A DNA stretch of 64,000 bases, from NCBI GenBank assembly GCA_907165135.1, contig OU015566.1:14446001-14510000 (forward strand). Reading direction: 5' to 3'. The notes beneath the pieces were generated by a model. It did not search any database, was not told the DNA's origin, and was given only the letters and a program-made list of their open reading frames with translations. This DNA comes from Oikopleura dioica (Eukaryota; Animalia; Chordata). Below are positions 7,374-64,000 of the stretch, in pieces; positions within the stretch are counted from its first letter, which is position 1, and every line of letters starts with the position of its first letter. Position numbers and translations under genes: made by a program.

Positions 7374-8198
7374 GAGTGGAGGACTCTCGCCCAAGTGGAC
7401 TCTCGCCCAAGTGGACTCCCGCCCAAGATGGACTCCCGCCCAAGTTGGGCGAGAGTCCTTTGGGCGAGAGTCCATGTGGAAATTTTCAACAATGAGAAAC
7501 AGAAAGTTGGGCGAGAGTCCTCCACTCCAATTGTTAATGACTATTCAATGACAAAAGAAAGCAATGAGCTGTATATAATATATATGCAATGTACTTTGTA
7601 TAAATTAAAGTTAGGGTTAGGGGGCACTGGGCAAAATGACAGAACAACCTTACCCGAGGGGGATAGGCTAGGGTTAGTTAGGGTTACTGAAGGTAACCCT
7701 AAGTAACCCTAGACTAGACCCCGGCATCTTAGGACCTAAGGGGCGAAGCCCCGTGGTAAGGGGCAATTAGATTTGATAATTTCGGCTGAAAAGCGGTGCA
7801 GTAAGACTTACCTTCTCTTTCAACTTAGTCGAGGATAAGTACTTTTTGAGAGTTCCAGTTTTATTAGCAAAGGTCAATATTTTCTCACGTCAAAGAATTT
7901 ATGCTTTCGCTTATTTTGCTGGACAAACCGAAACTGGAACTCTCAAAAAGTGCTAATCGTCGACTAGGTTGAAAAGAAGGTAAGTCTTACTGCACCACTT
8001 TTGTCATTGAATAGTCATTAACAATTGGAGTGGAGGACTCTCGCCCAAGATCGGCTCTCGCTCAACTTTCTGTTTCTCATTGTTGAAAATTTCCACATGG
8101 ACTCTCGCCCAAGATGGACTCCCGCCCAAGTTGGGCGAGAGTCCTTTGGGCGGGAGTCCACTTGGGCGAGAGTCCACTTGGGCGAGAGTCCTCCACTC
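7374..8198. mobile_element. Non-autonomous MULE/foldback-like DNA transposon (825 bp)
   Basis: Long TIRs start GAGTGGAGGACTCTCGCCCAAG, with tandem GGACTCTCGCCCAAG subrepeats. Perfect 9-bp TSD CCTTCAGCC at 7365-7373 and 8199-8207. Extra internal hairpin at ~7787-7865/7930-8003. Confidence 0.85.
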
Positions 8199-35163: not shown

Positions 35164-36871
35164 ATGAAGCCTTCACCCCACTTCAAATCGCCGAAGAAGA
35201 CTTCTAACAAATCATCCAACTCGAAGCTGGCCTCAGATCTTGATCCCGACCAACCAAGTAAGCGATAAAATAAACATTGAAAATAAACTCGAATTATAGC
35301 GCCGATTCCCCAACGAAAGATAAGATTTGCGAAGGAATCAACTGAGATTTCCCCTGAAATACCGTTACCGGAGCTTCCCCAATCTCAGGGGAGCACGGAT
35401 GGCTGGGTAAACTCTGCTCTTGCTTCTTCACAATCCTCTGAGAACACCCTGGGATCCGAAGAAGAGATCGATGGAATTTCCGTATCAGTCAGTGGTGAAC
35501 TTTTCGATAATGAGCTGCAGCCAATGGATACTACGCAGATTACCCAGCAAGACCAAGAAAAAGCTAACTACTCTCAAGGCTCCTCCGTCTACAAAACGCC
35601 TGAAAAGAGTCTACCGAAAACGCCCAGTAAGACTGATCAATCAGCACCCGCTACGGCTCCACAGCCCTCGAGAAACCTTCGTCGAATCCTCTTCAATGAA
35701 AATCAGACAGGGAGATCAAAAAAGGTGATGAAAAGCAAAGCGAGGAAATTCGACAATAAATCGAATAGGTCCTTTGAAAGGAATTTCGGATTTGAAAAAT
35801 TCTTTTATTAATTTGATCCTTTGAATTTTTGAAATCCGGCAAAGACGAAACAACACGTCATCGAAACATTACACGATTGACGATATTTTCAACGATCCGA
35901 TCGTTCCAAACTCGACTTTTCCAAGCGCCAAGAAGAAGCCCTTATCAACGAAGAACGCGATGGTCGATTTGACGAAATCGAAGAAACCGAGGAAATCAGA
36001 ACAGTGGTCGCCCGTGCCGCTCGCGATAATGCGAGGATTGAGGAACGAATCGGAGCCTTTCAGATTGAGGAGAAATCGGAAGAATGCTTTTTCTGAAACG
36101 GCGCCTGTTGAGGAAAGGGTTGAAAAGTTTTATTGCTTCAAGAAATTTTCCGGAGAAAAAATAATTTTTTTTTTTTTATCAAAAAGTTCCCTTTCCAACC
36201 TTTAAAAAAGCCAACTCAAACTCGGAAAAGCATCGGCGACTCGTTTCTCGACAACACTGTTACCGTGACCAATCTTCCTTCCGAGAGAAACGCTGCTGAT
36301 ACGACAAATCCCGAGTACGAGACAATTGACCGCTCTTTAAATGTCACCGCTGGTACCTCCGAACAGCCTGAGCCTGCTTTCTCTGGCTCTTCTTCAGATG
36401 TTTCCTCCAGAAGAATGGCACGCAAGGACGATAAAGGCTCTTCAATTGCTGATGCTGTAAAAACCGCTTCAAATCAACGAGAAGAGGTAACGATTTGAAA
36501 TCATGAAAAAGTACTCTAACTTCATTTTAGTCTGACGAGTCAAGCCGACCAGCTACGCGAGCAGCGTCAGTCCGAATAGCTTCGAGGGCAGCGTCAAGCC
36601 GAATTAGCCAAGCTATATCAAACCATATCAACCCGCCGAAAAGAACGAAGTGGACAGAAGTAAGCTTTTTATAAATGATTTAAATCTTTAATTGTTATAA
36701 ATTTAGGACGAGGACGGCAAGCTGATAGAAGGCCTCAATCTATACGGAAAAAACTGGAAAAAGATCGAGGTAGAGTTTTTCCGAGGAACGACGAGGACGA
36801 ACGTCAACCTCAAAGACAGACACCGTGTGCTTCTCAATAAAGACGACCATCGGGTGAAGGAAAAATACTAA
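35164..36871 (+). CDS. Telobox/TRF-like Myb-domain gene, paralogue A (no PDZ; middle region rearranged, status uncertain)
   Basis: Last exons give KRTKWTE|DEDGKLIEGLNLYGKNWKKIEVEFFRGTTRTNVNLKDRHRVLLNKDDHRVKEKY*. 5' exons, introns and 3' flank are clearly homologous to 48088-52050. Segment ~35720-36200 is unrelated to paralogue B. Confidence 0.6.
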
Positions 36872-46269: not shown

Positions 46270-46760
46270 CAGAAATTCTGGATCGCTCGAACGCATGGCT
46301 CGCGGGAAATAAGCGAAGGTACTGAGGACCAAGGATTAGTGTAACTAATGAACTGTCTAGTGAAGGAAGTGTTCTTCATCAGCAACATTCTGCAATTCGA
46401 AATGATCCACTTCATCGGCCAGCTGCAGTACTACATTCACTTCGAAATCAGCGAGACATCTTGGGCAGTCTTCGCCGAAAAGGTAAGTCCTTCTTGGTCG
46501 CACCAAACCGGATCATTTGCAGGTCGAGATTTAGCAAATGACCTGAATGAAGTGATCATCGCGCACAATGCCTTCCTCAACGAGCTGGAACAGGGCTAAC
46601 TGCTCGCGGACTCTCTCTGGGACAAGATAAAATCACTCAGAATTGCGAACATCTTTTGCCTCCATTGCCAAATCAAGTGCCTTTTCCGAGGATGATGAGC
46701 TGCTAGAGAAAGAACGCAGAAACTCCTTCAAGAACGAAATGTTCAAGCACAAGGTAAAAA
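46270..46760 (+). pseudogene. TUBGCP3: Gamma-tubulin complex component 3 (GRIP2 domain) fragment
   Basis: FEMIHFIGQLQYYIHFEISETSWAVF..DLNEVIIAHNAFLNELEQG*LLADS matches GCP3 [31 protein letters not shown]; in-frame stop. Confidence 0.75.
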
Positions 46761-47611
46761 AGAGATTCAATTCAAAATGTAACGATTTCCCAGTGTTCGG
46801 TGACCACCTGCCGGACGACTTACCAGAAAATCCTCCCAGCCAGTCCTTTCTCTTCATGTGTCCACACGCGGCGATGCTGCTCAAAAGAAGAATTCAGAAG
46901 TGCCCCTACAGTGTTGACAAGTACAGTTACACTCGAAAAGCTGAAAGTTTAATCTAGTTTCTTAGGCAATTAGCGCCCCTGACGAATATTTTGATGAACC
47001 TCTCAGTTTCGCAGCTGCAGGAAACGCTGCTGGAAAAGTGACGCAATGGGAAATCTCTGGAAAGGACATCTTCGACCTCGATTACGATATCGACGATTCC
47101 ATCGAGGTAAAAACGGCTGTTTTTCAGTGGTCATCAATTTGATCGTTTTAGTGTATTCCAGACGTAACGATGGACAACGAGTCGGGAATGCACGAGCACT
47201 GGATGTTCTTGAACAAAGAAGTCACCGTTTCCAGCGAAAAACAAATCGGCCAAAACCCGAAGTCGTTTATTTGTTCAAAGATATGGTGGATTTCTGGTGA
47301 GTCCAATCGAATCTATTGACAGGACCCCTAACGCTTCTGACTAGTGACACGGCGAACGATGAAATGATGAAGGTGTCGCATAGTTTGTACGCGGCGCTGC
47401 TCATTCACGAGCCCCTCCACTCTTTGGTGGAGCAATTCGAGCGCCTCTTTCCCGAACTGCGCCTTTCCGGCTTCCGAGAGAAGCTCGAGCCCAGATGCGC
47501 GTCACTCTTCGCAGCAGAGAGCATTTCGCTGACGATGATCGAAGTTGTCGACTCGTTGCTGTCTGCCGCCTTTCCCAGCGTGGAACTGTTCTTTTCCTTC
47601 CTCATTCCATT

Positions 47612-47955
47612 GCTGCCTGCCTCTAACCTGTTACGACCTCATGCGACCCGACGTTGTTCTCGAGCAATCGTGGGGAAACGGAATCCAGGACTTTGCCATG
47701 CCTTACTTTATCTAGGTAACAAATGATGATGATTTTTATGCTTATCTTGAATAAGCCGAAGAGCCCGAGCAGCCGATGATCATGGCGCCTCAACTCATGT
47801 TGGCGAACTCTGCACATATGCCCGGCATGGCAGGAGCACCGGTAGAAGTCCTTCTCAAGTTTTATTTTTGATAAACTTTTCAGAATCCATTCGGTCAACC
47901 TGAGATTGGGTTGCCTGCCAAACTAATTCGGTGGAATGCCTGGACAATTCAAAGC
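47612..47955 (+). pseudogene. CLTC: Clathrin heavy chain C-terminal fragment, continuation of 41322-43440
   Basis: [33 protein letters not shown] then EPEQPMIMAPQLMLAN; matches [37 protein letters not shown] and PQLML. Confidence 0.88.
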
Positions 47956-48141
47956 TTTTTCTCAACTGATTCTTTCTTTCTACTTTTTGATTCGTCCATG
48001 TCTAAACGATCATTTTTTATCTGATCGAGAGACTGCGATCAAGGCGAGTCGGAGCATCATTTGAAAATACTCATTTTTCGAGAATCGAGTAGAGAAAGGA
48101 TCCCATATTTTTTGTTCAGACAGTGCGCTATCGGATTGAGA

Positions 48142-51100
48142 ATGAAACGAAAAGAGAGTGATGAATCCCCTTCGTCTGGCCGATCTGGACGAAAAGAGAG
48201 TGATGAATCCCCTTCGTCTGGCCGATCTGGAAGAATCAAGCAGCCAGTGAGCGCAGCATCTGTCAAAACTTCTCAAAAAGATTGTAAGTGGAAATGTTTG
48301 GTGTAATTTTAAACAACTGAAACTAGCACAAGGATCGAAAAATGAGCCCGCTCGAACGAGATCTTCACAAATTCATGTTCATCTAACCCCAGAAAAATCA
48401 CAGGCGACCACGCAAGAGAGCTTGGAAGATTCTCAAAGACTATCTCAACTGAGCCGTTACGAGATGATGGAACGAGCTGCTGAGTTTTCGCAGCCTTCGC
48501 CCTACTTCAAATCGCCGGAGAAGACTTCTAACAACTCGAAGCTGGCCTCAGATCTTGATCCCGACCAACCAAGTAAGCGATCAAATAAATATTGAAAATA
48601 AACTCGAATTATAGCGCCGATAAGCGACGATCCCCTGGAAGGAATTGAAAAATTGACCCAAGCTGCTCTTGCGTCTTCTCAATCGTCTGAGAATACTCTG
48701 CGATCCGAAGAAGGGATCGCTGGAATTTCCGTATCATTCAGTGGTGAACTATTCAATGATGAAGTGCCTTCGGATCCAGAGATCTCCCTCTCCGTCAGCG
48801 GAGAACTTTTCGATGATGAGCTGCAGCCAATGGATACTACGCAGATTTCCCAGCAAGAAGAAGACGAAGGGAACTCTTCTCAAGGATCCTCCGTCTACGA
48901 AACGCCTGAAAAGAGTCTACCAAAAACGCCCAGTAAGACTGATCAATCAGCACCCGCTTCACCTCCACAGCCCCCGAGAAAGCTTCGTCGAAGCCTCTTC
49001 AATGAAAATCAGGAAGAACCGATGGATACCCCGGAGATAATCATGGCGTCCTCGGGAGATACGACAGGGAGATCGAAAAAGGTCGAAATGAAAGATTCCT
49101 GGTCACAGGTTTCTGGAGAGACGCTACGAGAGACTGAAGGGAGAAAAAGAAGGACTCACGATGTGCAGAACTTATGCGCCGAAGAGTCTCAAGGAGAGAG
49201 GAACCAGACTCAGCGAGTGGGCGATCTTCTAAACCACTCAGCGCTTGTTCTCGACTCACAACAGTCAGCACAAACAACTCAAGCTCAACATGAGTCAACA
49301 TCGGCAACTCAAATCCAACCTCGACAAAAGTCACAAGGGACTAACAAAATATATTTCCCGCCTCCCACTTCTTCAACCTTGAAGCAAGCCTCAGCGACAC
49401 AGAAGACTTTCGACGAGGATTTAGATGACGATTACTTTGCGAAGCTCAAATCGCCGACGAGGAATGCTGATATAAAGAAAATTAACAAGCAAGCAGATCA
49501 GGCTAAACAGCAAAAAAGGGTTAATAGAAGAATGCCGCGATCGAGAGCAAAACCAACTCGTGACGAGGTGAAAAAATCGGTGGCTGAAGCCTGTCGCAAA
49601 GCACAAGCTGGCGGAATTAGTCGACGTCTGGAACTCGCGAGGGCTTTTATTTCAAGAAGAAACCGAGCACGAGATTCGAGCGATCCCTTGAATCGAGAAC
49701 TCGAAAATGCGACTTCTTGGGAGCCAAAAGTACCGAATGCGAATTTTTCTCAAAAAAGAGTTAACAGAAAAATGCCGAGATCGACAGCAAAACCAACGCG
49801 TGATGAGGTCAAAGAATCGGTGGCTAAAGCCTGTCGAAAATTACAAGCTGGCAGTATAAAACAACGTCTGGAATTCGCTAGAGCATTTATTTTGAGAAGA
49901 AAGCGAGATCCGAACGATCCCTTGGAACGAGAACTTGAAAAAGCGACTTCTTGGGAGCCAAAAGTACCGAAGGTGAATTTTTCGAAGCCCGTTCCAGGAT
50001 CATCAAGCCGTTTCAAAAAGCGTCTTCCAGTAGCGGAAAAGCTTGCTAAAGAAAAACCGACCCCTTCGAAATCTAAAGCTTCAAAATCCCTAACCAAAGA
50101 ATTGAGTGCGAAACCGAAGGGAAAGAGGAATGACGAAGCGGAGAATCAACCAACGTGCAGCAAGAATTTAACACCTCCAGCGATGCCACAAGATGTTGAT
50201 CTTTCTAGCTTCTTGGACTCGAGCGAGGATGAGGAAGTTCGTCGAGAAGTTTCGCGAGAAGAATGTGATGAAAAAACAATCATCATCAAAGATGCAAAGA
50301 ACATTCAGGGCCGCATTGGGTTCAGGCTTAACGAATCGAGCGAAGCAGGAATCTACATCAACGGGATTATCCCGGGGTCGGCAGCAGATAAAGCTGGGCT
50401 TCGTGTTGGAGATACTCTAATTTGCTTCAACGGTGTGAAATGCTCCGTCAAGAGCAAAATCAAGCTGTCTATGCTGCGAATAGTCATTGCCGAAACGGCA
50501 ACGGAAGACTTCGAATTCAAAGTTATTCGCGATGTGTCCGACCAGTATTCGCAGGAAGAAAACGTTGACACATCGGAAGTTTCAGACATTCCAGATGCAG
50601 AGCCTGCAAAAGAAAAACCGGGACCATCGAAATCTAAATCTTCGGAATCGCAAAGTCAGGAACGCTCGCAGCCACGAGAAGAGCAGGAGTCAGCTCATAA
50701 CTGGTCGCAGCAAGTTCTGTTCGATGAATCTCCGGAGGATCGACAAGCTCTATCGCCTGAATATGATCAGTCCCCACCCGCGCCAATTGACAGAGAGGAC
50801 GTTCGCGAATCTATGTTTCCCACCTCAAAGAAGAGAAAGCTTCAGACTCCTGAAAAGGACGCGCAGGGCGAAGCAAGCGCTAAAGTTCAAGCAGCGAAAA
50901 GGAGCAAGCACGAGAAGGAAAATATAACGCCTAAGAAAAGCGCTTCAAAGCCGACGACTCTTACGCCAGCTGTGGATAACACCAATGTTCGTCGTCCAGG
51001 AAGAGATGCCCTGAGCGAGATTTCGGACTTGTCTTCTGCATTTGATAATGACAGTCCAATTAGAGGCGTCGGAAAGATGAAGCAAAGTCAAAAGAAAGCT

Positions 51101-51827
51101 ACCAAAGAAAAGAGTGCGAAACTGAGGCATGACGAACCAACGTGCAGCAAGAATTTAACACCTCCAGCGATGCCACCAGATGCTGATCTTTCTAGCTTCT
51201 TGGACTCGAGCGAGGATGAGGAAGTTCCTCGACCGCAAAGTCGTCCTCGGAGAAGTAATAGATCGCCAACAGCTAGCATGCCGAAGCTCACCAAATCACG
51301 ATCACCAGAGAAGTCACCATCGCCATCTAAATCAAAAAAGAAGCCGATTTCGATGAAGAAAAATGCTGTAAAAACCAGACGACGGAATCCGAGGCCAGAA
51401 TCTATTGCTTCGAATCAACGAGAAGAGGTAACGATTTGTAATCATGAAAAAGTACTCTAACTTCACTTTAGTCTGACGAGTCAAGCCGACCAGCTACGCG
51501 GGCAGCGTCAAGCCGAAAAGCTTCGCGGGCAGCATCAAGCCAAATTACAAAAATTTGTGCGAATAAAGAATTTGCCCCAGTCGTGCAGGACTCAAAAAGA
51601 AAGAATTGGACAGATGTAAGCTCTTTATAAATGATTTATATCTTTAATTGTTATAAATTTAGGACGAGGACGCCAAGCTGATTGAGGGCCTCAATCAATA
51701 CGGAAAAGACTGGAAAACGATCGAGAAAAAGTTTTTCCGTAGATCGAAGAGGACCAACGTCCAACTCAAAGACAGACACCGTGTGCTTCTCGATAAAGGC
51801 GACCCACGGGTGAAGGAAAAATACTAA
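48142..51827 (+). CDS. Large disordered protein with a PDZ domain and a C-terminal TRF-like telobox Myb domain (paralogue B, ~1,150 aa, 5 coding exons)
   Basis: Canonical GT-AG splicing keeps the frame from ATG 48142 through a 2.8-kb stop-free exon to TAA 51825-51827. PDZ: GRIGFRL..GIYINGIIPGSAADKAGLRVGDTLICFNG. Myb: KRKNWTD|DEDAKLIEGLNQYGKDWKTIEKKFFRRSKRTNVQLKDRHRVLLDK. Confidence 0.85.
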
Positions 51828-52124
51828 ACCCCTTTCCTTCTTCTTCACTGTATATAATTCACCTTTTGACTTATCACCTCACTTTTAAACTCTTTATTCA
51901 CTGCCTTTGTCGCCTTACTATGATTATAAATTAACGTTTTTTCGATTTTAGGTTGAATCAGATTGAGAGCGCACTCGAGCTGCCAAAAATTACATCAAGG
52001 ATGAAAGAAGATATTCTTGAATTGGAAGAATCGAATCCAAAATGGCGAGCACGATCACAACTCCTATAACGGCGAAAATGGCGAAAACTACGAAAACAAG
52101 ACGAAGCAGAACAAAAGCGTCAAA

Positions 52125-56855: not shown

Positions 56856-57040
56856 CCGTTTACACAATCCAGTCTGCGACGGGGCCAAGCCGATCCAAAG
56901 GGGAGGCAAGGCCCGTTTACACAATCCAGTCTGCGACGGGGCCAAGCCGATCCAAAGGGGAGGCAAGGCCCGTTTACACAATCCAGTCTGCGACGGGGCA
57001 AAGCCAACCCGAAGGGGAGGCCAGGCCCGTTTACACAATT
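56856..57040. repeat. 57-bp tandem repeat, 3 copies plus a partial copy
   Basis: Unit CCGTTTACACAATCCAGTCTGCGACGGGGCCAAGCCGATCCAAAGGGGAGGCAAGGC; copies 1 and 2 identical, copy 3 variant. Confidence 0.95.
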
Positions 57041-57061: not shown

Positions 57062-60000
57062 CCGGTTTCTGCCGGTTTGTCATTAGGGTTACGAATTTGG
57101 ATAAGGTTCAAGATAGTTTGAGAGTGTTTTAGGCCGGTTTCTGCCGGTTTGTCATTAGGGTTACGAATTTGGATAAGGTTCAAGATAGTTTGAGAGTGTT
57201 TTAGGCCGGTTTCTGCCGGTTTGTCATTAGGGTTACGAATTTGGATAAGGTTCAAGATAGTTTGAGAGTGTTTTAGGCCGGTTTCTGCCGGTTTGTCATT
57301 AGGGTTACGAATTTGGATAAGGTTCAAGATAGTTTGAGAGTGTTTTAGGCCGGTTTCTGCCGGTTTGTCATTAGGGTTACGAATTTGGATAAGGTTCAAG
57401 ATAGTTTGAGAGTGTTTTAGGCCGGTTTCTGCCGGTTTGTCATTAGGGTTACGAATTTGGATAAGGTTCAAGATAGTTTGAGAGTGTTTTAGGCCGGTTT
57501 CTGCCGGTTTGTCATTAGGGTTACGAATTTGGATAAGGTTCAAGATAGTTTGAGAGTGTTTTAGGCCGGTTTCTGCCGGTTTGTCATTAGGGTTACGAAT
57601 TTGGATAAGGTTCAAGATAGTTTGAGAGTGTTTTAGGCCGGTTTCTGCCGGTTTGTCATTAGGGTTACGAATTTGGATAAGGTTCAAGATAGTTTGAGAG
57701 TGTTTTAGGCCGGTTTCTGCCGGTTTGTCATTAGGGTTACGAATTTGGATAAGGTTCAAGATAGTTTGAGAGTGTTTTAGGCCGGTTTCTGCCGGTTTGT
57801 CATTAGGGTTACGAATTTGGATAAGGTTCAAGATAGTTTGAGAGTGTTTTAGGCCGGTTTCTGCCGGTTTGTCATTAGGGTTACGAATTTGGATAAGGTT
57901 CAAGATAGTTTGAGAGTGTTTTAGGCCGGTTTCTGCCGGTTTGTCATTAGGGTTACGAATTTGGATAAGGTTCAAGATAGTTTGAGAGTGTTTTAGGCCG
58001 GTTTCTGCCGGTTTGTCATTAGGGTTACGAATTTGGATAAGGTTCAAGATAGTTTGAGAGTGTTTTAGGCCGGTTTCTGCCGGTTTGTCATTAGGGTTAC
58101 GAATTTGGATAAGGTTCAAGATAGTTTGAGAGTGTTTTAGGCCGGTTTCTGCCGGTTTGTCATTAGGGTTACGAATTTGGATAAGGTTCAAGATAGTTTG
58201 AGAGTGTTTTAGGCCGGTTTCTGCCGGTTTGTCATTAGGGTTACGAATTTGGATAAGGTTCAAGATAGTTTGAGAGTGTTTTAGGCCGGTTTCTGCCGGT
58301 TTGTCATTAGGGTTACGAATTTGGATAAGGTTCAAGATAGTTTGAGAGTGTTTTAGGCCGGTTTCTGCCGGTTTGTCATTAGGGTTACGAATTTGGATAA
58401 GGTTCAAGATAGTTTGAGAGTGTTTTAGGCCGGTTTCTGCCGGTTTGTCATTAGGGTTACGAATTTGGATAAGGTTCAAGATAGTTTGAGAGTGTTTTAG
58501 GCCGGTTTCTGCCGGTTTGTCATTAGGGTTACGAATTTGGATAAGGTTCAAGATAGTTTGAGAGTGTTTTAGGCCGGTTTCTGCCGGTTTGTCATTAGGG
58601 TTACGAATTTGGATAAGGTTCAAGATAGTTTGAGAGTGTTTTAGGCCGGTTTCTGCCGGTTTGTCATTAGGGTTACGAATTTGGATAAGGTTCAAGATAG
58701 TTTGAGAGTGTTTTAGGCCGGTTTCTGCCGGTTTGTCATTAGGGTTACGAATTTGGATAAGGTTCAAGATAGTTTGAGAGTGTTTTAGGCCGGTTTCTGC
58801 CGGTTTGTCATTAGGGTTACGAATTTGGATAAGGTTCAAGATAGTTTGAGAGTGTTTTAGGCCGGTTTCTGCCGGTTTGTCATTAGGGTTACGAATTTGG
58901 ATAAGGTTCAAGATAGTTTGAGAGTGTTTTAGGCCGGTTTCTGCCGGTTTGTCATTAGGGTTACGAATTTGGATAAGGTTCAAGATAGTTTGAGAGTGTT
59001 TTAGGCCGGTTTCTGCCGGTTTGTCATTAGGGTTACGAATTTGGATAAGGTTCAAGATAGTTTGAGAGTGTTTTAGGCCGGTTTCTGCCGGTTTGTCATT
59101 AGGGTTACGAATTTGGATAAGGTTCAAGATAGTTTGAGAGTGTTTTAGGCCGGTTTCTGCCGGTTTGTCATTAGGGTTACGAATTTGGATAAGGTTCAAG
59201 ATAGTTTGAGAGTGTTTTAGGCCGGTTTCTGCCGGTTTGTCATTAGGGTTACGAATTTGGATAAGGTTCAAGATAGTTTGAGAGTGTTTTAGGCCGGTTT
59301 CTGCCGGTTTGTCATTAGGGTTACGAATTTGGATAAGGTTCAAGATAGTTTGAGAGTGTTTTAGGCCGGTTTCTGCCGGTTTGTCATTAGGGTTACGAAT
59401 TTGGATAAGGTTCAAGATAGTTTGAGAGTGTTTTAGGCCGGTTTCTGCCGGTTTGTCATTAGGGTTACGAATTTGGATAAGGTTCAAGATAGTTTGAGAG
59501 TGTTTTAGGCCGGTTTCTGCCGGTTTGTCATTAGGGTTACGAATTTGGATAAGGTTCAAGATAGTTTGAGAGTGTTTTAGGCCGGTTTCTGCCGGTTTGT
59601 CATTAGGGTTACGAATTTGGATAAGGTTCAAGATAGTTTGAGAGTGTTTTAGGCCGGTTTCTGCCGGTTTGTCATTAGGGTTACGAATTTGGATAAGGTT
59701 CAAGATAGTTTGAGAGTGTTTTAGGCCGGTTTCTGCCGGTTTGTCATTAGGGTTACGAATTTGGATAAGGTTCAAGATAGTTTGAGAGTGTTTTAGGCCG
59801 GTTTCTGCCGGTTTGTCATTAGGGTTACGAATTTGGATAAGGTTCAAGATAGTTTGAGAGTGTTTTAGGCCGGTTTCTGCCGGTTTGTCATTAGGGTTAC
59901 GAATTTGGATAAGGTTCAAGATAGTTTGAGAGTGTTTTAGGCCGGTTTCTGCCGGTTTGTCATTAGGGTTACGAATTTGGATAAGGTTCAAGATAGTTTG

Positions 60001-63000
60001 AGAGTGTTTTAGGCCGGTTTCTGCCGGTTTGTCATTAGGGTTACGAATTTGGATAAGGTTCAAGATAGTTTGAGAGTGTTTTAGGCCGGTTTCTGCCGGT
60101 TTGTCATTAGGGTTACGAATTTGGATAAGGTTCAAGATAGTTTGAGAGTGTTTTAGGCCGGTTTCTGCCGGTTTGTCATTAGGGTTACGAATTTGGATAA
60201 GGTTCAAGATAGTTTGAGAGTGTTTTAGGCCGGTTTCTGCCGGTTTGTCATTAGGGTTACGAATTTGGATAAGGTTCAAGATAGTTTGAGAGTGTTTTAG
60301 GCCGGTTTCTGCCGGTTTGTCATTAGGGTTACGAATTTGGATAAGGTTCAAGATAGTTTGAGAGTGTTTTAGGCCGGTTTCTGCCGGTTTGTCATTAGGG
60401 TTACGAATTTGGATAAGGTTCAAGATAGTTTGAGAGTGTTTTAGGCCGGTTTCTGCCGGTTTGTCATTAGGGTTACGAATTTGGATAAGGTTCAAGATAG
60501 TTTGAGAGTGTTTTAGGCCGGTTTCTGCCGGTTTGTCATTAGGGTTACGAATTTGGATAAGGTTCAAGATAGTTTGAGAGTGTTTTAGGCCGGTTTCTGC
60601 CGGTTTGTCATTAGGGTTACGAATTTGGATAAGGTTCAAGATAGTTTGAGAGTGTTTTAGGCCGGTTTCTGCCGGTTTGTCATTAGGGTTACGAATTTGG
60701 ATAAGGTTCAAGATAGTTTGAGAGTGTTTTAGGCCGGTTTCTGCCGGTTTGTCATTAGGGTTACGAATTTGGATAAGGTTCAAGATAGTTTGAGAGTGTT
60801 TTAGGCCGGTTTCTGCCGGTTTGTCATTAGGGTTACGAATTTGGATAAGGTTCAAGATAGTTTGAGAGTGTTTTAGGCCGGTTTCTGCCGGTTTGTCATT
60901 AGGGTTACGAATTTGGATAAGGTTCAAGATAGTTTGAGAGTGTTTTAGGCCGGTTTCTGCCGGTTTGTCATTAGGGTTACGAATTTGGATAAGGTTCAAG
61001 ATAGTTTGAGAGTGTTTTAGGCCGGTTTCTGCCGGTTTGTCATTAGGGTTACGAATTTGGATAAGGTTCAAGATAGTTTGAGAGTGTTTTAGGCCGGTTT
61101 CTGCCGGTTTGTCATTAGGGTTACGAATTTGGATAAGGTTCAAGATAGTTTGAGAGTGTTTTAGGCCGGTTTCTGCCGGTTTGTCATTAGGGTTACGAAT
61201 TTGGATAAGGTTCAAGATAGTTTGAGAGTGTTTTAGGCCGGTTTCTGCCGGTTTGTCATTAGGGTTACGAATTTGGATAAGGTTCAAGATAGTTTGAGAG
61301 TGTTTTAGGCCGGTTTCTGCCGGTTTGTCATTAGGGTTACGAATTTGGATAAGGTTCAAGATAGTTTGAGAGTGTTTTAGGCCGGTTTCTGCCGGTTTGT
61401 CATTAGGGTTACGAATTTGGATAAGGTTCAAGATAGTTTGAGAGTGTTTTAGGCCGGTTTCTGCCGGTTTGTCATTAGGGTTACGAATTTGGATAAGGTT
61501 CAAGATAGTTTGAGAGTGTTTTAGGCCGGTTTCTGCCGGTTTGTCATTAGGGTTACGAATTTGGATAAGGTTCAAGATAGTTTGAGAGTGTTTTAGGCCG
61601 GTTTCTGCCGGTTTGTCATTAGGGTTACGAATTTGGATAAGGTTCAAGATAGTTTGAGAGTGTTTTAGGCCGGTTTCTGCCGGTTTGTCATTAGGGTTAC
61701 GAATTTGGATAAGGTTCAAGATAGTTTGAGAGTGTTTTAGGCCGGTTTCTGCCGGTTTGTCATTAGGGTTACGAATTTGGATAAGGTTCAAGATAGTTTG
61801 AGAGTGTTTTAGGCCGGTTTCTGCCGGTTTGTCATTAGGGTTACGAATTTGGATAAGGTTCAAGATAGTTTGAGAGTGTTTTAGGCCGGTTTCTGCCGGT
61901 TTGTCATTAGGGTTACGAATTTGGATAAGGTTCAAGATAGTTTGAGAGTGTTTTAGGCCGGTTTCTGCCGGTTTGTCATTAGGGTTACGAATTTGGATAA
62001 GGTTCAAGATAGTTTGAGAGTGTTTTAGGCCGGTTTCTGCCGGTTTGTCATTAGGGTTACGAATTTGGATAAGGTTCAAGATAGTTTGAGAGTGTTTTAG
62101 GCCGGTTTCTGCCGGTTTGTCATTAGGGTTACGAATTTGGATAAGGTTCAAGATAGTTTGAGAGTGTTTTAGGCCGGTTTCTGCCGGTTTGTCATTAGGG
62201 TTACGAATTTGGATAAGGTTCAAGATAGTTTGAGAGTGTTTTAGGCCGGTTTCTGCCGGTTTGTCATTAGGGTTACGAATTTGGATAAGGTTCAAGATAG
62301 TTTGAGAGTGTTTTAGGCCGGTTTCTGCCGGTTTGTCATTAGGGTTACGAATTTGGATAAGGTTCAAGATAGTTTGAGAGTGTTTTAGGCCGGTTTCTGC
62401 CGGTTTGTCATTAGGGTTACGAATTTGGATAAGGTTCAAGATAGTTTGAGAGTGTTTTAGGCCGGTTTCTGCCGGTTTGTCATTAGGGTTACGAATTTGG
62501 ATAAGGTTCAAGATAGTTTGAGAGTGTTTTAGGCCGGTTTCTGCCGGTTTGTCATTAGGGTTACGAATTTGGATAAGGTTCAAGATAGTTTGAGAGTGTT
62601 TTAGGCCGGTTTCTGCCGGTTTGTCATTAGGGTTACGAATTTGGATAAGGTTCAAGATAGTTTGAGAGTGTTTTAGGCCGGTTTCTGCCGGTTTGTCATT
62701 AGGGTTACGAATTTGGATAAGGTTCAAGATAGTTTGAGAGTGTTTTAGGCCGGTTTCTGCCGGTTTGTCATTAGGGTTACGAATTTGGATAAGGTTCAAG
62801 ATAGTTTGAGAGTGTTTTAGGCCGGTTTCTGCCGGTTTGTCATTAGGGTTACGAATTTGGATAAGGTTCAAGATAGTTTGAGAGTGTTTTAGGCCGGTTT
62901 CTGCCGGTTTGTCATTAGGGTTACGAATTTGGATAAGGTTCAAGATAGTTTGAGAGTGTTTTAGGCCGGTTTCTGCCGGTTTGTCATTAGGGTTACGAAT

Positions 63001-64000
63001 TTGGATAAGGTTCAAGATAGTTTGAGAGTGTTTTAGGCCGGTTTCTGCCGGTTTGTCATTAGGGTTACGAATTTGGATAAGGTTCAAGATAGTTTGAGAG
63101 TGTTTTAGGCCGGTTTCTGCCGGTTTGTCATTAGGGTTACGAATTTGGATAAGGTTCAAGATAGTTTGAGAGTGTTTTAGGCCGGTTTCTGCCGGTTTGT
63201 CATTAGGGTTACGAATTTGGATAAGGTTCAAGATAGTTTGAGAGTGTTTTAGGCCGGTTTCTGCCGGTTTGTCATTAGGGTTACGAATTTGGATAAGGTT
63301 CAAGATAGTTTGAGAGTGTTTTAGGCCGGTTTCTGCCGGTTTGTCATTAGGGTTACGAATTTGGATAAGGTTCAAGATAGTTTGAGAGTGTTTTAGGCCG
63401 GTTTCTGCCGGTTTGTCATTAGGGTTACGAATTTGGATAAGGTTCAAGATAGTTTGAGAGTGTTTTAGGCCGGTTTCTGCCGGTTTGTCATTAGGGTTAC
63501 GAATTTGGATAAGGTTCAAGATAGTTTGAGAGTGTTTTAGGCCGGTTTCTGCCGGTTTGTCATTAGGGTTACGAATTTGGATAAGGTTCAAGATAGTTTG
63601 AGAGTGTTTTAGGCCGGTTTCTGCCGGTTTGTCATTAGGGTTACGAATTTGGATAAGGTTCAAGATAGTTTGAGAGTGTTTTAGGCCGGTTTCTGCCGGT
63701 TTGTCATTAGGGTTACGAATTTGGATAAGGTTCAAGATAGTTTGAGAGTGTTTTAGGCCGGTTTCTGCCGGTTTGTCATTAGGGTTACGAATTTGGATAA
63801 GGTTCAAGATAGTTTGAGAGTGTTTTAGGCCGGTTTCTGCCGGTTTGTCATTAGGGTTACGAATTTGGATAAGGTTCAAGATAGTTTGAGAGTGTTTTAG
63901 GCCGGTTTCTGCCGGTTTGTCATTAGGGTTACGAATTTGGATAAGGTTCAAGATAGTTTGAGAGTGTTTTAGGCCGGTTTCTGCCGGTTTGTCATTAGGG
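57062..64000 (+). repeat. 72-bp tandem array, ~96 apparently identical copies, running off the window end; candidate telomeric or subtelomeric satellite
   Basis: Unit CCGGTTTCTGCCGGTTTGTCATTAGGGTTACGAATTTGGATAAGGTTCAAGATAGTTTGAGAGTGTTTTAGG (T27 G22 A15 C8). The 60-nt lines recur every 6 lines (360 = 5 x 72) and the antisense translation is an invariant 24-aa repeat. Confidence 0.99.

What the first reader, a model, noticed from the sequence alone, without database searches (positions are those of the whole stretch)
48142..51827. Apparently intact PDZ plus telobox-Myb protein: an unusual TRF-like architecture
The C-terminal domain KRKNWTDDEDAKLIEGLNQYGKDWKTI..RTNVQLKDRHRVL aligns with TRF1/TRF2 Myb (W..EED..L..GV.KYG..W..I....RTSVMLKDRWRTM), including the telobox LKDR motif, with the third Trp replaced by His. 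I see no TRFH domain. Instead there is a long disordered Ser/Lys/Glu-rich body with one PDZ domain, a combination I do not know from any described telomere protein. The 2.8-kb exon is stop-free next to a field of ruined genes, implying selection or very recent origin. It lies ~5 kb from the TTAGGG-containing array.
Basis: partly seen in the sequence, partly recalled or inferred. Interest (0 to 1): 0.85.

Follow-up and report, generated by a model that had tools for sequence, protein, structure and literature searches.

The report
Oikopleura PDZ plus telomere-type Myb gene
Near one end of chromosome 1 of the tunicate Oikopleura dioica lies an intact gene, one of a multi-copy family known only from Oikopleura, that joins a protein-docking PDZ domain to a DNA-binding domain of the kind vertebrate TRF1/TRF2 use to grip TTAGGG telomere repeats; whether it acts at telomeres is untested.

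Summary
Window 48142-51827 (+) is a five-exon, 1,169-codon open gene of Oikopleura dioica (Okinawa assembly, chr1, about 35 kb from the chromosome end). It encodes a mostly disordered Ser/Lys/Glu-rich protein with one PDZ domain and one C-terminal Myb domain.

The Myb is telobox (TRF) type:
- Its best full-domain sequence matches and top structural matches are telomeric Mybs.
- All four base-contacting residues of human TRF1 are invariant in the family.
- The third Trp is His or Tyr.
- No TRFH domain is detectable.

- The gene is one of at least seven Okinawa copies, and related copies occur in the Bergen lineage, where PDZ plus Myb is conserved.
- This copy is an in-frame mosaic that has lost several family motifs.
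- The public gene model wrongly fuses it to an upstream gene fragment.

Three sampled copies are truncated or broken; a fourth (P0003) keeps PDZ and Myb but carries a frame change. This copy stays open, which neutral decay is unlikely to allow.

DNA binding, telomere localisation and expression of this copy remain untested. The scan flagged the same family at other places in this genome. I rate it a new variant of a known kind, of moderate to high interest.

The parts
48142..48283 (+). Exon 1 with the start codon. It contains a perfect 42-bp tandem duplication (48147-48230) in place of the family's N-terminal 'VIDE' motif.
   Evidence: Sequence read. TRF and the repeat finder. The same ATG starts the independent models P0003 and P0004, and 47970-48176 is 99% identical to L004 5829-6035.
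48327..48572 (+). Exon 2, carrying the conserved SQLSRYEMMERAAE motif.
   Evidence: The motif is shared with the Bergen proteins.
48615..51427 (+). Exon 3, a 2,813-nt open exon. It encodes the disordered body, a duplicated helical segment, the PDZ and duplicated motif blocks.
49511..49983 (+). In-frame tandem duplication (units about 240 nt, 83-90% alike). It covers the C-terminal parts of the only confident helices outside the Myb (protein residues 445-478 and 525-574, window 49559-49660 and 49799-49948).
   Evidence: the repeat finder families D1 and D3. AF2 helices with pLDDT up to 85. tblastn shows P0003 residues 525-607 present twice.
50255..50602 (+). PDZ domain block (protein residues about 683-769; Pfam core 50291-50539).
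   Evidence: Pfam PDZ E 3.2e-9, above its cut-off. PDB sequence matches to PSD-95, DegP, PDZD7, NHERF1 and syntenin PDZs. 46% identity to the Bergen PDZ. The domain did not fold in the full-length AF2 model.
50148..51232 (+). Internal 987-nt in-frame duplication bounded by 98-nt repeats (50148-50245 and 51135-51232, 97% alike). It places the PDZ between two copies of the TCSKNLTPPAMP..SSEDEEV block.
   Evidence: the repeat finder family D2. Mosaic map against P0003.
50960..51064 (+). The best conserved linear motif of the family (..RRPGRDALSEISDLSSAFDNDSPIR).
   Evidence: 70% identity between Okinawa and Bergen, higher than in either folded domain.
51472..51615 (+). Exon 4: 27-bp repeats encoding Ser/Arg/Ala-rich linker, then the basic arm and start of helix 1 of the Myb (KRKNWTD, 51595-51615).
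   Evidence: The intron position after W-T-D is shared by all copies, including Bergen.
51663..51827 (+). Exon 5: the rest of the telobox-type Myb (helices 1-3), a conserved tail GDPRVKEKY and the stop codon.
   Evidence: Pfam. Profile against PDB. AF2 model with core pLDDT 86-90. Fold searches.
35167..36868 (+). Second, heavily deleted family copy. It keeps P0003 residues 112-177, 263-360, 1057-1129 and 1172-1266, has no PDZ, and keeps the Myb exon (76% identical to this gene's).
   Evidence: tblastn. Stops inside the homologous stretches.
57062..64000 (+). 72-bp tandem array, 96 identical units, each with one TTAGGGTTA on the + strand. It is a possible binding platform and is context only, not part of the gene.
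   Evidence: TRF. Pattern count of 99 in the window against 0.29 expected.

Best explanation
The stretch is a real protein-coding gene of Oikopleura dioica. It is the public model OKI2018_I69 chr1.g3931 without that model's first 292 residues, which come from an upstream gene fragment.

It belongs to a multi-copy, fast-evolving family found only in Oikopleura sequences. Family members consist of:
- a long disordered body studded with short conserved motifs;
- a short helical segment;
- one PDZ domain;
- a single telobox (TRF-type) Myb domain at the very C-terminus.

Most likely mechanism (inferred, not shown): the Myb domain binds duplex TTAGGG-type DNA as the TRF1/TRF2 Myb does. Helix 3 would lie in the major groove and the basic KRK arm in the minor groove. 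The PDZ and the linear motifs would recruit partner proteins in place of a TRFH domain. The natural targets would be the TTAGGG telomeres of O. dioica and telomere-derived satellites such as the neighbouring 72-mer.

The copy in this window is a subtelomeric, in-frame mosaic built by internal duplications and exchange among paralogues. Its reading frame is kept open, so it is probably still used. It has nevertheless lost several family motifs.
For: Gene and family:
- The exon model equals the public model's C-terminal 1,169 aa.
- PDZ and Myb pass Pfam thresholds.
- PDZ plus Myb is conserved in the Bergen lineage: P0008 and P0160 are annotated with both, and the Myb exons missed by model P0007 lie at L001:9423-9736.
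- Identity between Okinawa and Bergen is 61% in the Myb and 46% in the PDZ, against 25% in the N-terminal body.

Telobox identity of the Myb:
- With the family profile, the best single-domain PDB match that spans the whole domain is zebrafish Terfa (32.5 bits; RTAVNLKDRWRTMVK against RTNVNLKDRHRvLLK). Human TRF1 and TRF2 follow at 32 and 30 bits. The T. vaginalis Myb repeat reaches 29 and c-Myb R1 15, and the SHAQKYF hit (36 bits) covers helices 1-2 only.
- Among 750 Myb repeats in the 143 non-family proteins of the 1.84-billion-protein search, 8 of the top 10 and 20 of the top 30 per-domain scores carry [LIMV]KD[RK]x[RK]. Overall 33 of 750 do (Fisher p about 1e-23).
- In the AF2 model (core pLDDT 86-90), the top 7 of 48,161 representative PDB chains are telomeric Mybs: NgTRF1 Z 9.2, three hTRF1 entries 8.0-7.6, two Tbf1 entries 7.3 and 7.1, and hTRF2 7.2. 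hTRF2-DNA superposes at rmsd 1.2 A over 54 residues.
- The hTRF1 base contacts R380, K421, D422 and R425, the phosphate contacts W383, R415 and R423, and 8 of 9 core residues are conserved in all 11 family Mybs (Tables 2-3 of PMC2377444; alignment; structural register).
- TTAGGG is the O. dioica telomere repeat (PMC8008620).

Open frame of this copy:
- The nearest annotated proteins are 87-91% identical in amino acids, and the nearest DNA is 86-88% identical over most of exon 3.
- Random substitutions leave the frame open in 4% of trials at 2% change and in 0.05% at 6%.
- All five internal repeat spacings are multiples of three.
- Most indels against the paralogues are multiples of three.
- Three sampled copies are truncated or show frame changes (L004, L005, L006). 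A fourth, P0003 (L002), keeps PDZ and Myb but has a frame change patched by an annotated intron.

Transcription:
- A 239-nt contig from an oligo-dT plankton metatranscriptome matches 48901-49139 with one mismatch, where the sampled paralogues are at most 89% identical.
- A short family member comes from a source labelled 'merc' under a sequencing-run accession, which I take to be a marine metatranscriptome catalogue.
Against: - No DNA-binding, localisation or knock-down data exist.
- Three bulk RNA runs gave no reads anywhere on the 5.7 kb laid, so they are no test. The one matching metatranscriptome contig has depth about 2.6, spans no splice junction and could come from DNA.
- Margins over non-telomeric Mybs are modest: about 1-2 Z units, and 3 bits over a Trichomonas Myb repeat.
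- A telobox-like Myb can lose DNA binding, as the TERB1 Myb has (abstract of PMC8867601).
- A single Myb binds weakly without dimerisation, and no dimerisation domain is shown here.
- Pairwise dN/dS against P0003 is 0.45-1.2, with 0.81 in the PDZ and 0.93 in the Myb exon.
- This copy lacks the N-terminal VIDE motif, the RKPxRSIxSSxxTRDP motif before the PDZ and both NPEYETFD motifs.
- The PDZ did not fold in the full-length AF2 model.
Confidence: 0.6

Rival explanations
1. This copy is a by-product of subtelomeric duplication and recombination with no function of its own. The working family members lie elsewhere (for example PAR.g10616 or PAR.g10079), and the open frame reflects youth or gene conversion from working copies.
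For: - The gene is a mosaic of blocks with very different dS to P0003 (0.08 to 0.35). Short stretches are 95-99% identical to other copies, which points to recent exchange.
- Motifs shared between the lineages are lost, and the PDZ sits in a non-canonical place.
- dN/dS is near 1 in the PDZ and Myb exon.
- The gene lies among gene fragments.
- Expression of this copy is not established.
Against: - Over most of exon 3 the nearest known DNA is 12-14% different. A frame of 1,169 codons staying open through even a quarter of that change is unlikely.
- The internal duplications and most indels are in frame.
- The Myb differences from P0003 avoid every core and DNA-contact position.
- This copy keeps the ancestral frame where P0003 does not.
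Confidence: 0.3
2. The family is a chromatin or transcription factor unrelated to chromosome ends. Its Myb would recognise another sequence, or act as a SANT-like protein-binding module. Alternatively it would bind interstitial or promoter TTAGGG-like motifs, as I recall plant TRB proteins and yeast Tbf1 doing (not checked here).
For: - Single-sequence PDB search ranks Trichomonas Myb, a SHAQKYF Myb and c-Myb above TRF1.
- Structural Z-scores of SANT and R2R3 Mybs are within about 1-2 of the telomeric ones.
- Other family copies are not next to TTAGGG arrays.
- The family has no TRFH.
Against: - The non-telomeric hits either sum several repeats or cover helices 1-2 only. In per-domain, full-length terms telobox Mybs are best.
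- Helix 3 and the basic arm keep every base-contacting residue of hTRF1.
- The SANT domains rank below the telomeric Mybs and share only 16-24% identity with the model.
Confidence: 0.2
3. The unit is a mobile or selfish element that carries a Myb-type DNA-binding protein, which would explain its many copies.
For: There are several dispersed copies at 82-95% identity, and a shared 5' flank is 99% identical to the chr2 copy.
Against: - No transposase, integrase or reverse transcriptase is called beside any copy.
- The copies travel with different host-gene fragments (E1/UPF0172, clathrin, SET, NFACT-R), as expected of segmental duplication.
- The protein architecture is conserved between lineages whose copies are only about 40% identical.
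Confidence: 0.05

Closest known systems
Vertebrate TRF1/TRF2 (TERF1/TERF2; zebrafish Terfa) Myb domain
   Same: - A single C-terminal three-helix Myb of the same overall length, with helix 3 reading RTxVxLKDRxR.
- A basic arm before the first Trp.
- All hTRF1 base contacts conserved (R380, K421, D422, R425).
- 33-39% identity, rmsd 0.8-1.6 A to the crystal structures.
   Different: - No TRFH dimerisation/docking domain, and no acidic or basic N-terminus of the TRF kind.
- A PDZ and about 1,000 disordered residues instead.
- The third core Trp (W424) is His or Tyr.
- A conserved 9-residue tail (GDPRVKEKY) follows helix 3.
Uncharacterised ascidian proteins with two telobox Mybs (Styela clava XP_039265388, P0151; Phallusia mammillata CAB3261678, P0154)
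   Same: - Best-scoring animal relatives of the Oikopleura Myb (49.7 and 41.5 bits per domain; 48% and 40% identity).
- Long Ser-rich disordered body.
- The telobox Myb ends the protein.
- The third aromatic is Tyr (LKDRYR, LKDKYR).
   Different: - They carry an N-terminal helical-looking domain of about 200 aa and a second, internal telobox Myb, and have no PDZ.
- No similarity outside the Myb.
- Whether their N-terminal domain is a TRFH could not be settled.
Plant NgTRF1 / TRFL family 1 (telobox Myb with C-terminal extension)
   Same: Top structural match (Z 9.2, 63 residues, rmsd 2.1 A). The match also covers the conserved tail after helix 3.
   Different: The plant extension is a full fourth helix whose Arg-638 contacts DNA (PMC2377444). 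Here the tail is only about 9 residues. There is no PDZ in the plant proteins.
TERB1 (meiotic telomere to nuclear-envelope tether)
   Same: A large scaffold protein with a single C-terminal telobox-like Myb. Its Myb (1x58) is among the structural matches.
   Different: - As I recall, TERB1 has N-terminal ARM repeats and a TRF1-binding region (not checked here); no ARM family is found in this protein.
- Its Myb matches less well (18 bits, Z 6.2).
- Its Myb is reported to have lost canonical DNA binding (PMC8867601 abstract).
C. elegans TEBP-1/TEBP-2
   Same: Lineage-specific duplex-telomere binders built from Myb modules (abstract of PMC11032478). I recall them as lacking a TRFH (not checked here). 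They are a precedent for non-TRF solutions.
   Different: Several Myb modules, one of which serves for dimerisation; TTAGGC telomeres; no PDZ. Not compared by sequence here.

Membership tests
Telobox (telomeric duplex-DNA-binding) Myb domain | Three-helix Myb/homeodomain-like fold | tested here: met
   Pfam Myb_DNA-binding and Myb_DNA-bind_6 above their cut-offs. AF2 gives helices 18-31, 35-42 and 50-63 with core pLDDT 86-90.
Telobox (telomeric duplex-DNA-binding) Myb domain | Helix-3 motif of the form V-x-[LI]-K-D-[KR]-W-R | tested here: met
   RTNVQLKDRHR; K, D, R and R are invariant in 11 family Mybs. The Trp position is His or Tyr. Among 33 other telobox repeats found here that position is W 18, F 7, Y 3, V 2, A 2, C 1.
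Telobox (telomeric duplex-DNA-binding) Myb domain | Basic N-terminal arm with an Arg that enters the minor groove (hTRF1 R380) | tested here: met
   KRKNW, with Arg three residues before the first Trp. Model residues 12-63 align to hTRF1 379-430. Contacts are from PMC2377444 Table 3.
Telobox (telomeric duplex-DNA-binding) Myb domain | Closer to telomeric Mybs than to other Myb/SANT classes | tested here: met
   Per-domain profile scores. The top 7 of 48,161 PDB representatives are telomeric Mybs. Margins are modest.
Telobox (telomeric duplex-DNA-binding) Myb domain | Sequence-specific binding of TTAGGG-type duplex DNA | not testable with these tools
   Needs EMSA, fluorescence polarisation or DAP-seq.
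TRF1/TRF2 family (shelterin duplex binders) | TRFH homodimerisation/docking domain (Pfam TRF, PF08558) | tested here: not met
   No Pfam hit at E up to 5 on any part. AF2 shows only two short helical segments outside the Myb. PDB sequence search of the helical part finds nothing.
TRF1/TRF2 family (shelterin duplex binders) | C-terminal telobox Myb | tested here: met
   See the rows above.
TRF1/TRF2 family (shelterin duplex binders) | Telomere localisation and binding of TIN2/RAP1 | not testable with these tools
   No localisation or interaction data were available here.
PDZ domain | Match to the PDZ profile above the curated threshold, with a carboxylate-binding loop | tested here: met
   PF00595 at 37.5 bits (cut-off 23.2) and PF17820 at 34 bits (cut-off 27). 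The GRIGF loop is conserved as IGF or IGL in all copies. PDB sequence matches are to many PDZs.
PDZ domain | PDZ beta-sandwich fold | tested here: inconclusive
   The full-length AF2 model left residues 575-849 under pLDDT 50, probably because the rearranged alignment is poor there.
TERB1-like meiotic telomere tether | N-terminal ARM-repeat domain (feature recalled from memory) | tested here: not met
   No ARM or HEAT family in Pfam scans. The N-terminal 440 residues are predicted disordered.
Transposon-borne Myb protein (e.g. PIF/Harbinger partner) | Adjacent transposase gene and terminal repeats | tested here: not met
   No transposase family among the called neighbours of seven loci. Terminal repeats were not searched exhaustively.

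The most novel reading that the evidence does not exclude
Oikopleura dioica is a chordate with ordinary TTAGGG telomeres that is reported to lack classical end joining. In this reading it has replaced the TRFH-based TRF1/TRF2 anchor of shelterin with this PDZ-Myb family. The family would then be its main duplex-telomere binder. Partners would be recruited through the PDZ and short linear motifs. The gene would be duplicating and diversifying within subtelomeric and other duplication-prone regions, alongside telomere-derived satellites that each carry a TRF half-site.
Probability: 0.2. Interest if true: 0.85.

Novelty: new variant of a known kind. Interest (0 to 1): 0.6.

Why it matters
Proteins that bind duplex telomere DNA are known in detail for vertebrates, yeasts, plants and lately nematodes, but I found no study of them in tunicates. 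O. dioica keeps the vertebrate TTAGGG repeat (PMC8008620). It is also described as lacking non-homologous end joining and as having an extremely reshuffled genome (PMC12426944).

A family that combines the TRF-type DNA-reading head with a PDZ, without a TRFH domain, would show that the shelterin anchor can be rebuilt on another scaffold inside the chordates. It would also give a concrete handle (tagging, ChIP, knock-down) on how chromosome ends are protected where the main threat that TRF2 guards against is absent.

The family's copy-number flux also makes it a case study of a DNA-binding protein evolving in duplication-prone regions, here next to a possible target satellite. If the Myb does not bind TTAGGG, the finding reduces to a lineage-specific Myb factor of ordinary interest.

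Tried and rejected
- **RNA runs X5-X7** (same species label, 2026 raw reads) gave zero reads over the whole 5.7 kb, flanking genes included. They probably come from another O. dioica lineage, so they are no test of expression.
- **Word-indexed homologue searches** with the Myb region of P0008 and with the ascidian protein P0154 returned only the queries themselves.
- **Foldseek on the low-confidence full-length model** gave nothing usable.
- **Protein-atlas look-ups** gave only generic Myb clusters for the Myb, no hit for P0008, and unrelated helical bundles for the ascidian N-terminus.
- **TRFH in the ascidian relatives:** Pfam and a five-sequence profile against PDB found none. This is unresolved, not excluded.
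- **First dN/dS attempts** used over-extended BLAST alignments and were discarded in favour of the stricter blocks.
- **P0002's locus** is not on record.
- **Rejected readings:**
  - a transposon-borne Myb, because there is no transposase and the flanks are varied host-gene fragments;
  - a TERB1 orthologue, because there is no ARM domain and the Myb match is weaker;
  - a generic SANT domain, because the DNA-contact residues are kept;
  - the public model's N-terminal GCP-like extension as part of the protein, because three independent family models start at the same ATG.


Full report
**1. What is at 48142-51827**

Reading the DNA gives five exons on the + strand with GT..AG introns of 42-47 nt:
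- 48142-48283
- 48327-48572
- 48615-51427
- 51472-51615
- 51663-51827

. Spliced, they make 3,510 nt, 1,169 codons and one terminal stop. The product is identical to residues 293-1461 of a public gene model, P0001 (Oikopleura dioica OKI2018_I69 chr1.g3931).

That model adds 292 N-terminal residues taken from GCP-like fragments upstream. Two other family models (P0003, P0004) start at the ATG equivalent to 48142, and the 172 nt before it are 99% identical to the chr2 copy. I therefore take the extension to be a fusion artefact.

The record places the gene on chr1 (14,533,022 bp), with its stop codon about 35 kb from the right end.

**2. Domains**

- Pfam finds one PDZ (E 3.2e-9, above the curated cut-off) and, from exon 5 alone, a Myb domain (E 6.6e-8).
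- Nothing else is found, even at E up to 5.
- A full-length AlphaFold model is disordered apart from two helical segments (residues 445-478 and 525-574) and the three Myb helices. The PDZ did not fold in that model, probably because the rearranged alignment is poor there.
- Composition is S 13.5%, K 10.1%, E 9.0%.

**3. Is the Myb a telobox (TRF-type) Myb?**

A single-sequence PDB search is ambiguous: Trichomonas Myb, a SHAQKYF Myb and c-Myb rank above TRF1. Those hits either sum several repeats or cover helices 1-2 only. Five further lines of evidence agree on a telobox type, though the margins over other Mybs are modest.

- *Profile against PDB.* With a family profile, the best single-domain match that spans the whole domain is zebrafish Terfa (32.5 bits), followed by human TRF1 (32) and TRF2 (30). 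The Trichomonas repeat scores 29 and c-Myb R1 scores 15. Helix 3 reads RTNVNLKDRHR against RTAVNLKDRWR.
- *Unbiased large search.* I ranked by per-domain score the 750 Myb repeats in the 143 non-family proteins returned by the profile search of 1.84 billion proteins. Of these, 8 of the top 10 and 20 of the top 30 carry [LIMV]KD[RK]x[RK], against 33 of 750 overall (Fisher p about 1e-23).
- *Structure.* A domain model (core pLDDT 86-90) was aligned to 48,161 representative PDB chains. The top seven are all telomeric Mybs: NgTRF1 Z 9.2, three hTRF1 entries 8.0-7.6, two Tbf1 entries 7.3 and 7.1, and hTRF2 7.2. SANT and R2R3 Mybs follow from Z 7.1 downwards. Foldseek and the second-look alignment agree, with hTRF2-DNA at rmsd 1.2 A over 54 residues.
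- *DNA-contact residues.* According to Tables 2-3 of PMC2377444, hTRF1 reads bases with R380, K421, D422 and R425. It holds phosphates with Q381, W383, S404, R415, S417 and R423. In the structural register (model 12-63 = hTRF1 379-430), all four base contacts and W383, R415 and R423 are identical and invariant in all 11 family Mybs. Eight of nine core residues are conserved in kind, and both salt-bridge acids are present.
- *The unusual residue.* The one deviation is the core Trp424, which is His in eight family Mybs and Tyr in three. Among other telobox repeats in the search, that position is also F, Y, V, A or C.

The family also has a conserved tail after helix 3 (GDPRVKEKY; D, R and V invariant or nearly so). 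Its role is unknown. The plant Myb extension that contacts DNA is a loose precedent.

**4. The gene is a member of a family**

*Okinawa genome.* Related proteins are annotated at PAR.g10616 (P0003), PAR.g10079 (P0002), chr2.g5496 (P0004), chr2.g5486 (P0005) and chr1.g1380 (P0006). A deleted copy lies in this window at 35167-36868.

*Bergen genome.*
- Tandem copies are interleaved with NFACT-R fragments on one scaffold (P0008, P0160, P0013).
- Another copy (P0007) lies on a second scaffold. I found the Myb exons its model had missed at L001:9423-9736.
- P0008 and P0160 carry PDZ and Myb in the same order as P0003.

*Conservation between the lineages*:

| Region | Identity |
|---|---|
| Myb | 61% |
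| PDZ | 46% |
| ..RRPGRDALSxIxDLSSAFDNDxPIR block | 70% |
| N-terminal body | 25% |

*Reach beyond Oikopleura.* Apart from unnamed metagenome or metatranscriptome pieces, every family member that carries an organism name is O. dioica. One short member (P0029) comes from a source labelled 'merc' under a sequencing-run accession, which I take to be a marine metatranscriptome catalogue.

*Nearest outsiders.* The closest outside relatives whose organism is named are the C-terminal Mybs of uncharacterised ascidian proteins: Styela clava XP_039265388 and Phallusia mammillata CAB3261678. Two unnamed proteins from ENA contigs with the same two-Myb layout (P0083, P0111) score about the same. The ascidian proteins have 40-48% identity, a Tyr at the Trp position, and the Myb at the very end of a long disordered protein. 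They also carry an N-terminal helical-looking domain and a second, internal telobox Myb, but no PDZ. Whether their N-terminal domain is a TRFH could not be decided.

**5. This copy is a mosaic**

Against P0003 it reads 1-57, 168-607, 525-647 (again), 786-846, 912-1027 (PDZ), 620-863 (again) and 1125-1266.

The DNA shows the following internal repeats:
- a perfect 42-bp tandem duplication in exon 1;
- a 240-nt tandem duplication covering the C-terminal parts of the helical segments;
- a 987-nt duplication bounded by 98-nt repeats that are 97% alike, which puts the PDZ between two copies of the TCSKNLTPPAMP..SSEDEEV block.

All these spacings are multiples of three.

Block-wise dS to P0003 ranges from 0.08 to 0.35, and short stretches are 95-99% identical to other copies. 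The gene therefore seems to have been assembled by exchange among paralogues.

It has lost the N-terminal VIDE motif, the RKPxRSIxSSxxTRDP motif and both NPEYETFD motifs. On the other hand it keeps the ancestral frame in a stretch (..PPRKLRRSLFNENQEEPMDTPEIIMAS..) where P0003 runs out of frame and its annotated model bridges the frame change with an 83-nt intron.

**6. Is it under selection?**

For the open frame being maintained:
- Over most of exon 3 the nearest DNA is 86-88% identical, and no annotated protein is closer than 87-91%.
- Random substitution of the coding sequence leaves it open in 20% of trials at 1% change, 4% at 2%, 1% at 3% and 0.05% at 6%, before counting indels.
- Most indels against the paralogues are multiples of three.
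- The chr2 and chr1.g1380 copies show frame changes, a PDZ split by 8 kb, or truncation.

Against strong constraint:
- Pairwise dN/dS is 0.45-1.2, with 0.81 in the PDZ and 0.93 in the Myb exon. The 14 Myb differences from P0003 nevertheless avoid every core and contact position.

I read this as a frame that is kept open with fast-changing surfaces. Decay held back by gene conversion is not excluded.

**7. Expression**

- Three bulk RNA runs gave no reads at all on the 5.7 kb laid, so they are no test.
- One oligo-dT plankton metatranscriptome gave a 239-nt contig at 48901-49139 with one mismatch, where sampled paralogues are at most 89% identical.
- A second contig (51135-51363) continues into sequence that encodes the HPKIIPSAARKP stretch present in P0003 but absent from this copy, so it comes from another family copy.

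. This is suggestive only.

**8. Context**

TTAGGG is the O. dioica telomere repeat, chr1 is assembled telomere to telomere, and subtelomeres are reported to hold long-period tandem repeats (PMC8008620). The 72-bp array 5.2 kb downstream has 96 identical units, each with one TTAGGGTTA. The other family loci fetched have no such array within 6-10 kb, so the linkage is not a family trait. O. dioica is described as lacking NHEJ (PMC12426944), which makes its end-protection proteins of special interest.

**9. Verdict**

Observation: confirmed.

Interpretation: the telobox assignment, the PDZ and the lack of a TRFH are supported. Uniqueness is not, and function is untested.

Classification:
- It works like a TRF-type DNA-reading head on a different scaffold.
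- It is not a member of the TRF1/TRF2 family, because the TRFH test fails.
- I found no paper that describes a PDZ plus telobox protein and none on tunicate TRF proteins.
- I rate it a new variant of a known kind.

The scan's first readers flagged the same family at other places in this genome.

Noticed in passing
window 57062-64000: 72-bp tandem array of 96.4 copies at 100% identity, running off the window edge. Each unit has one TTAGGGTTA on the + strand, and GC skew is +0.47. A 57-bp repeat (56856-57039) and a 10-bp repeat precede it.
   Followed up: partly
window 35167-36868: Second family copy with the same first and last parts but most of the middle deleted. It has no PDZ, stops lie in the homologous stretches, and its Myb exon is 76% identical to this gene's. 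The 3' flank up to about 37106 is also duplicated (87% to 51407-52063), so the downstream gene start was copied too.
   Followed up: partly
window 46348-48141 (upstream part of public model P0001): The public gene model chr1.g3931 fuses GCP-like fragments to the PDZ-Myb gene. A metatranscriptome contig lies on the minus strand at 47749-47960 and skips 42 nt (47841-47882, GT..AG), so the region may be transcribed antisense.
   Followed up: no
window 7611-7702: Small interstitial cluster of telomere-type repeats: three TTAGGGTTA sites on both strands, one of them TTAGGGTTAGGG.
   Followed up: no
L002:9230-9394 (PAR.g10616, P0003): The annotated 83-nt intron bridges a frame change. Homology to this window's gene and to the Bergen proteins continues in the other frame, so about 25 residues of P0003 are an out-of-frame reading. 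This is either a real frameshift or an assembly error.
   Followed up: partly
L004 (chr2 5.73 Mb), L005 (chr2 5.66 Mb), L006 (chr1 5.12 Mb): Other family copies lie far from the chromosome ends among repeated host-gene fragments (UPF0172 plus E1 fragments beside both L005 and L006; a clathrin fragment beside L004, as in this window). The public models fuse two of them to C2H2 zinc fingers.
   Followed up: partly
P0151 (Styela clava), P0154 (Phallusia mammillata), P0083, P0111, P0102: These proteins share a layout: an N-terminal helical-looking domain of about 200 aa, an internal telobox Myb, a disordered linker and a C-terminal telobox Myb. P0102 has more Myb repeats. P0151 and P0154 are ascidian; the other three are unnamed and P0102's source was not looked up. 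They are candidate tunicate TRF proteins that current profiles do not recognise as TRFH.
   Followed up: partly
window 50915-51064 (protein residues 897-946): The most conserved linear motif contains R-D-A-L-S-E-I-S-D, and in the Okinawa copies it is preceded by K-E-N. From memory these resemble APC/C D-box and KEN degrons. The KEN is not conserved in Bergen. This is a lead only.
   Followed up: no
L007 (Bergen scaffold FN653062.1): Family copies in the Bergen genome are arranged in tandem, each beside a fragment of an NFACT-R_1 gene. One public model (P0160) fuses the two.
   Followed up: no
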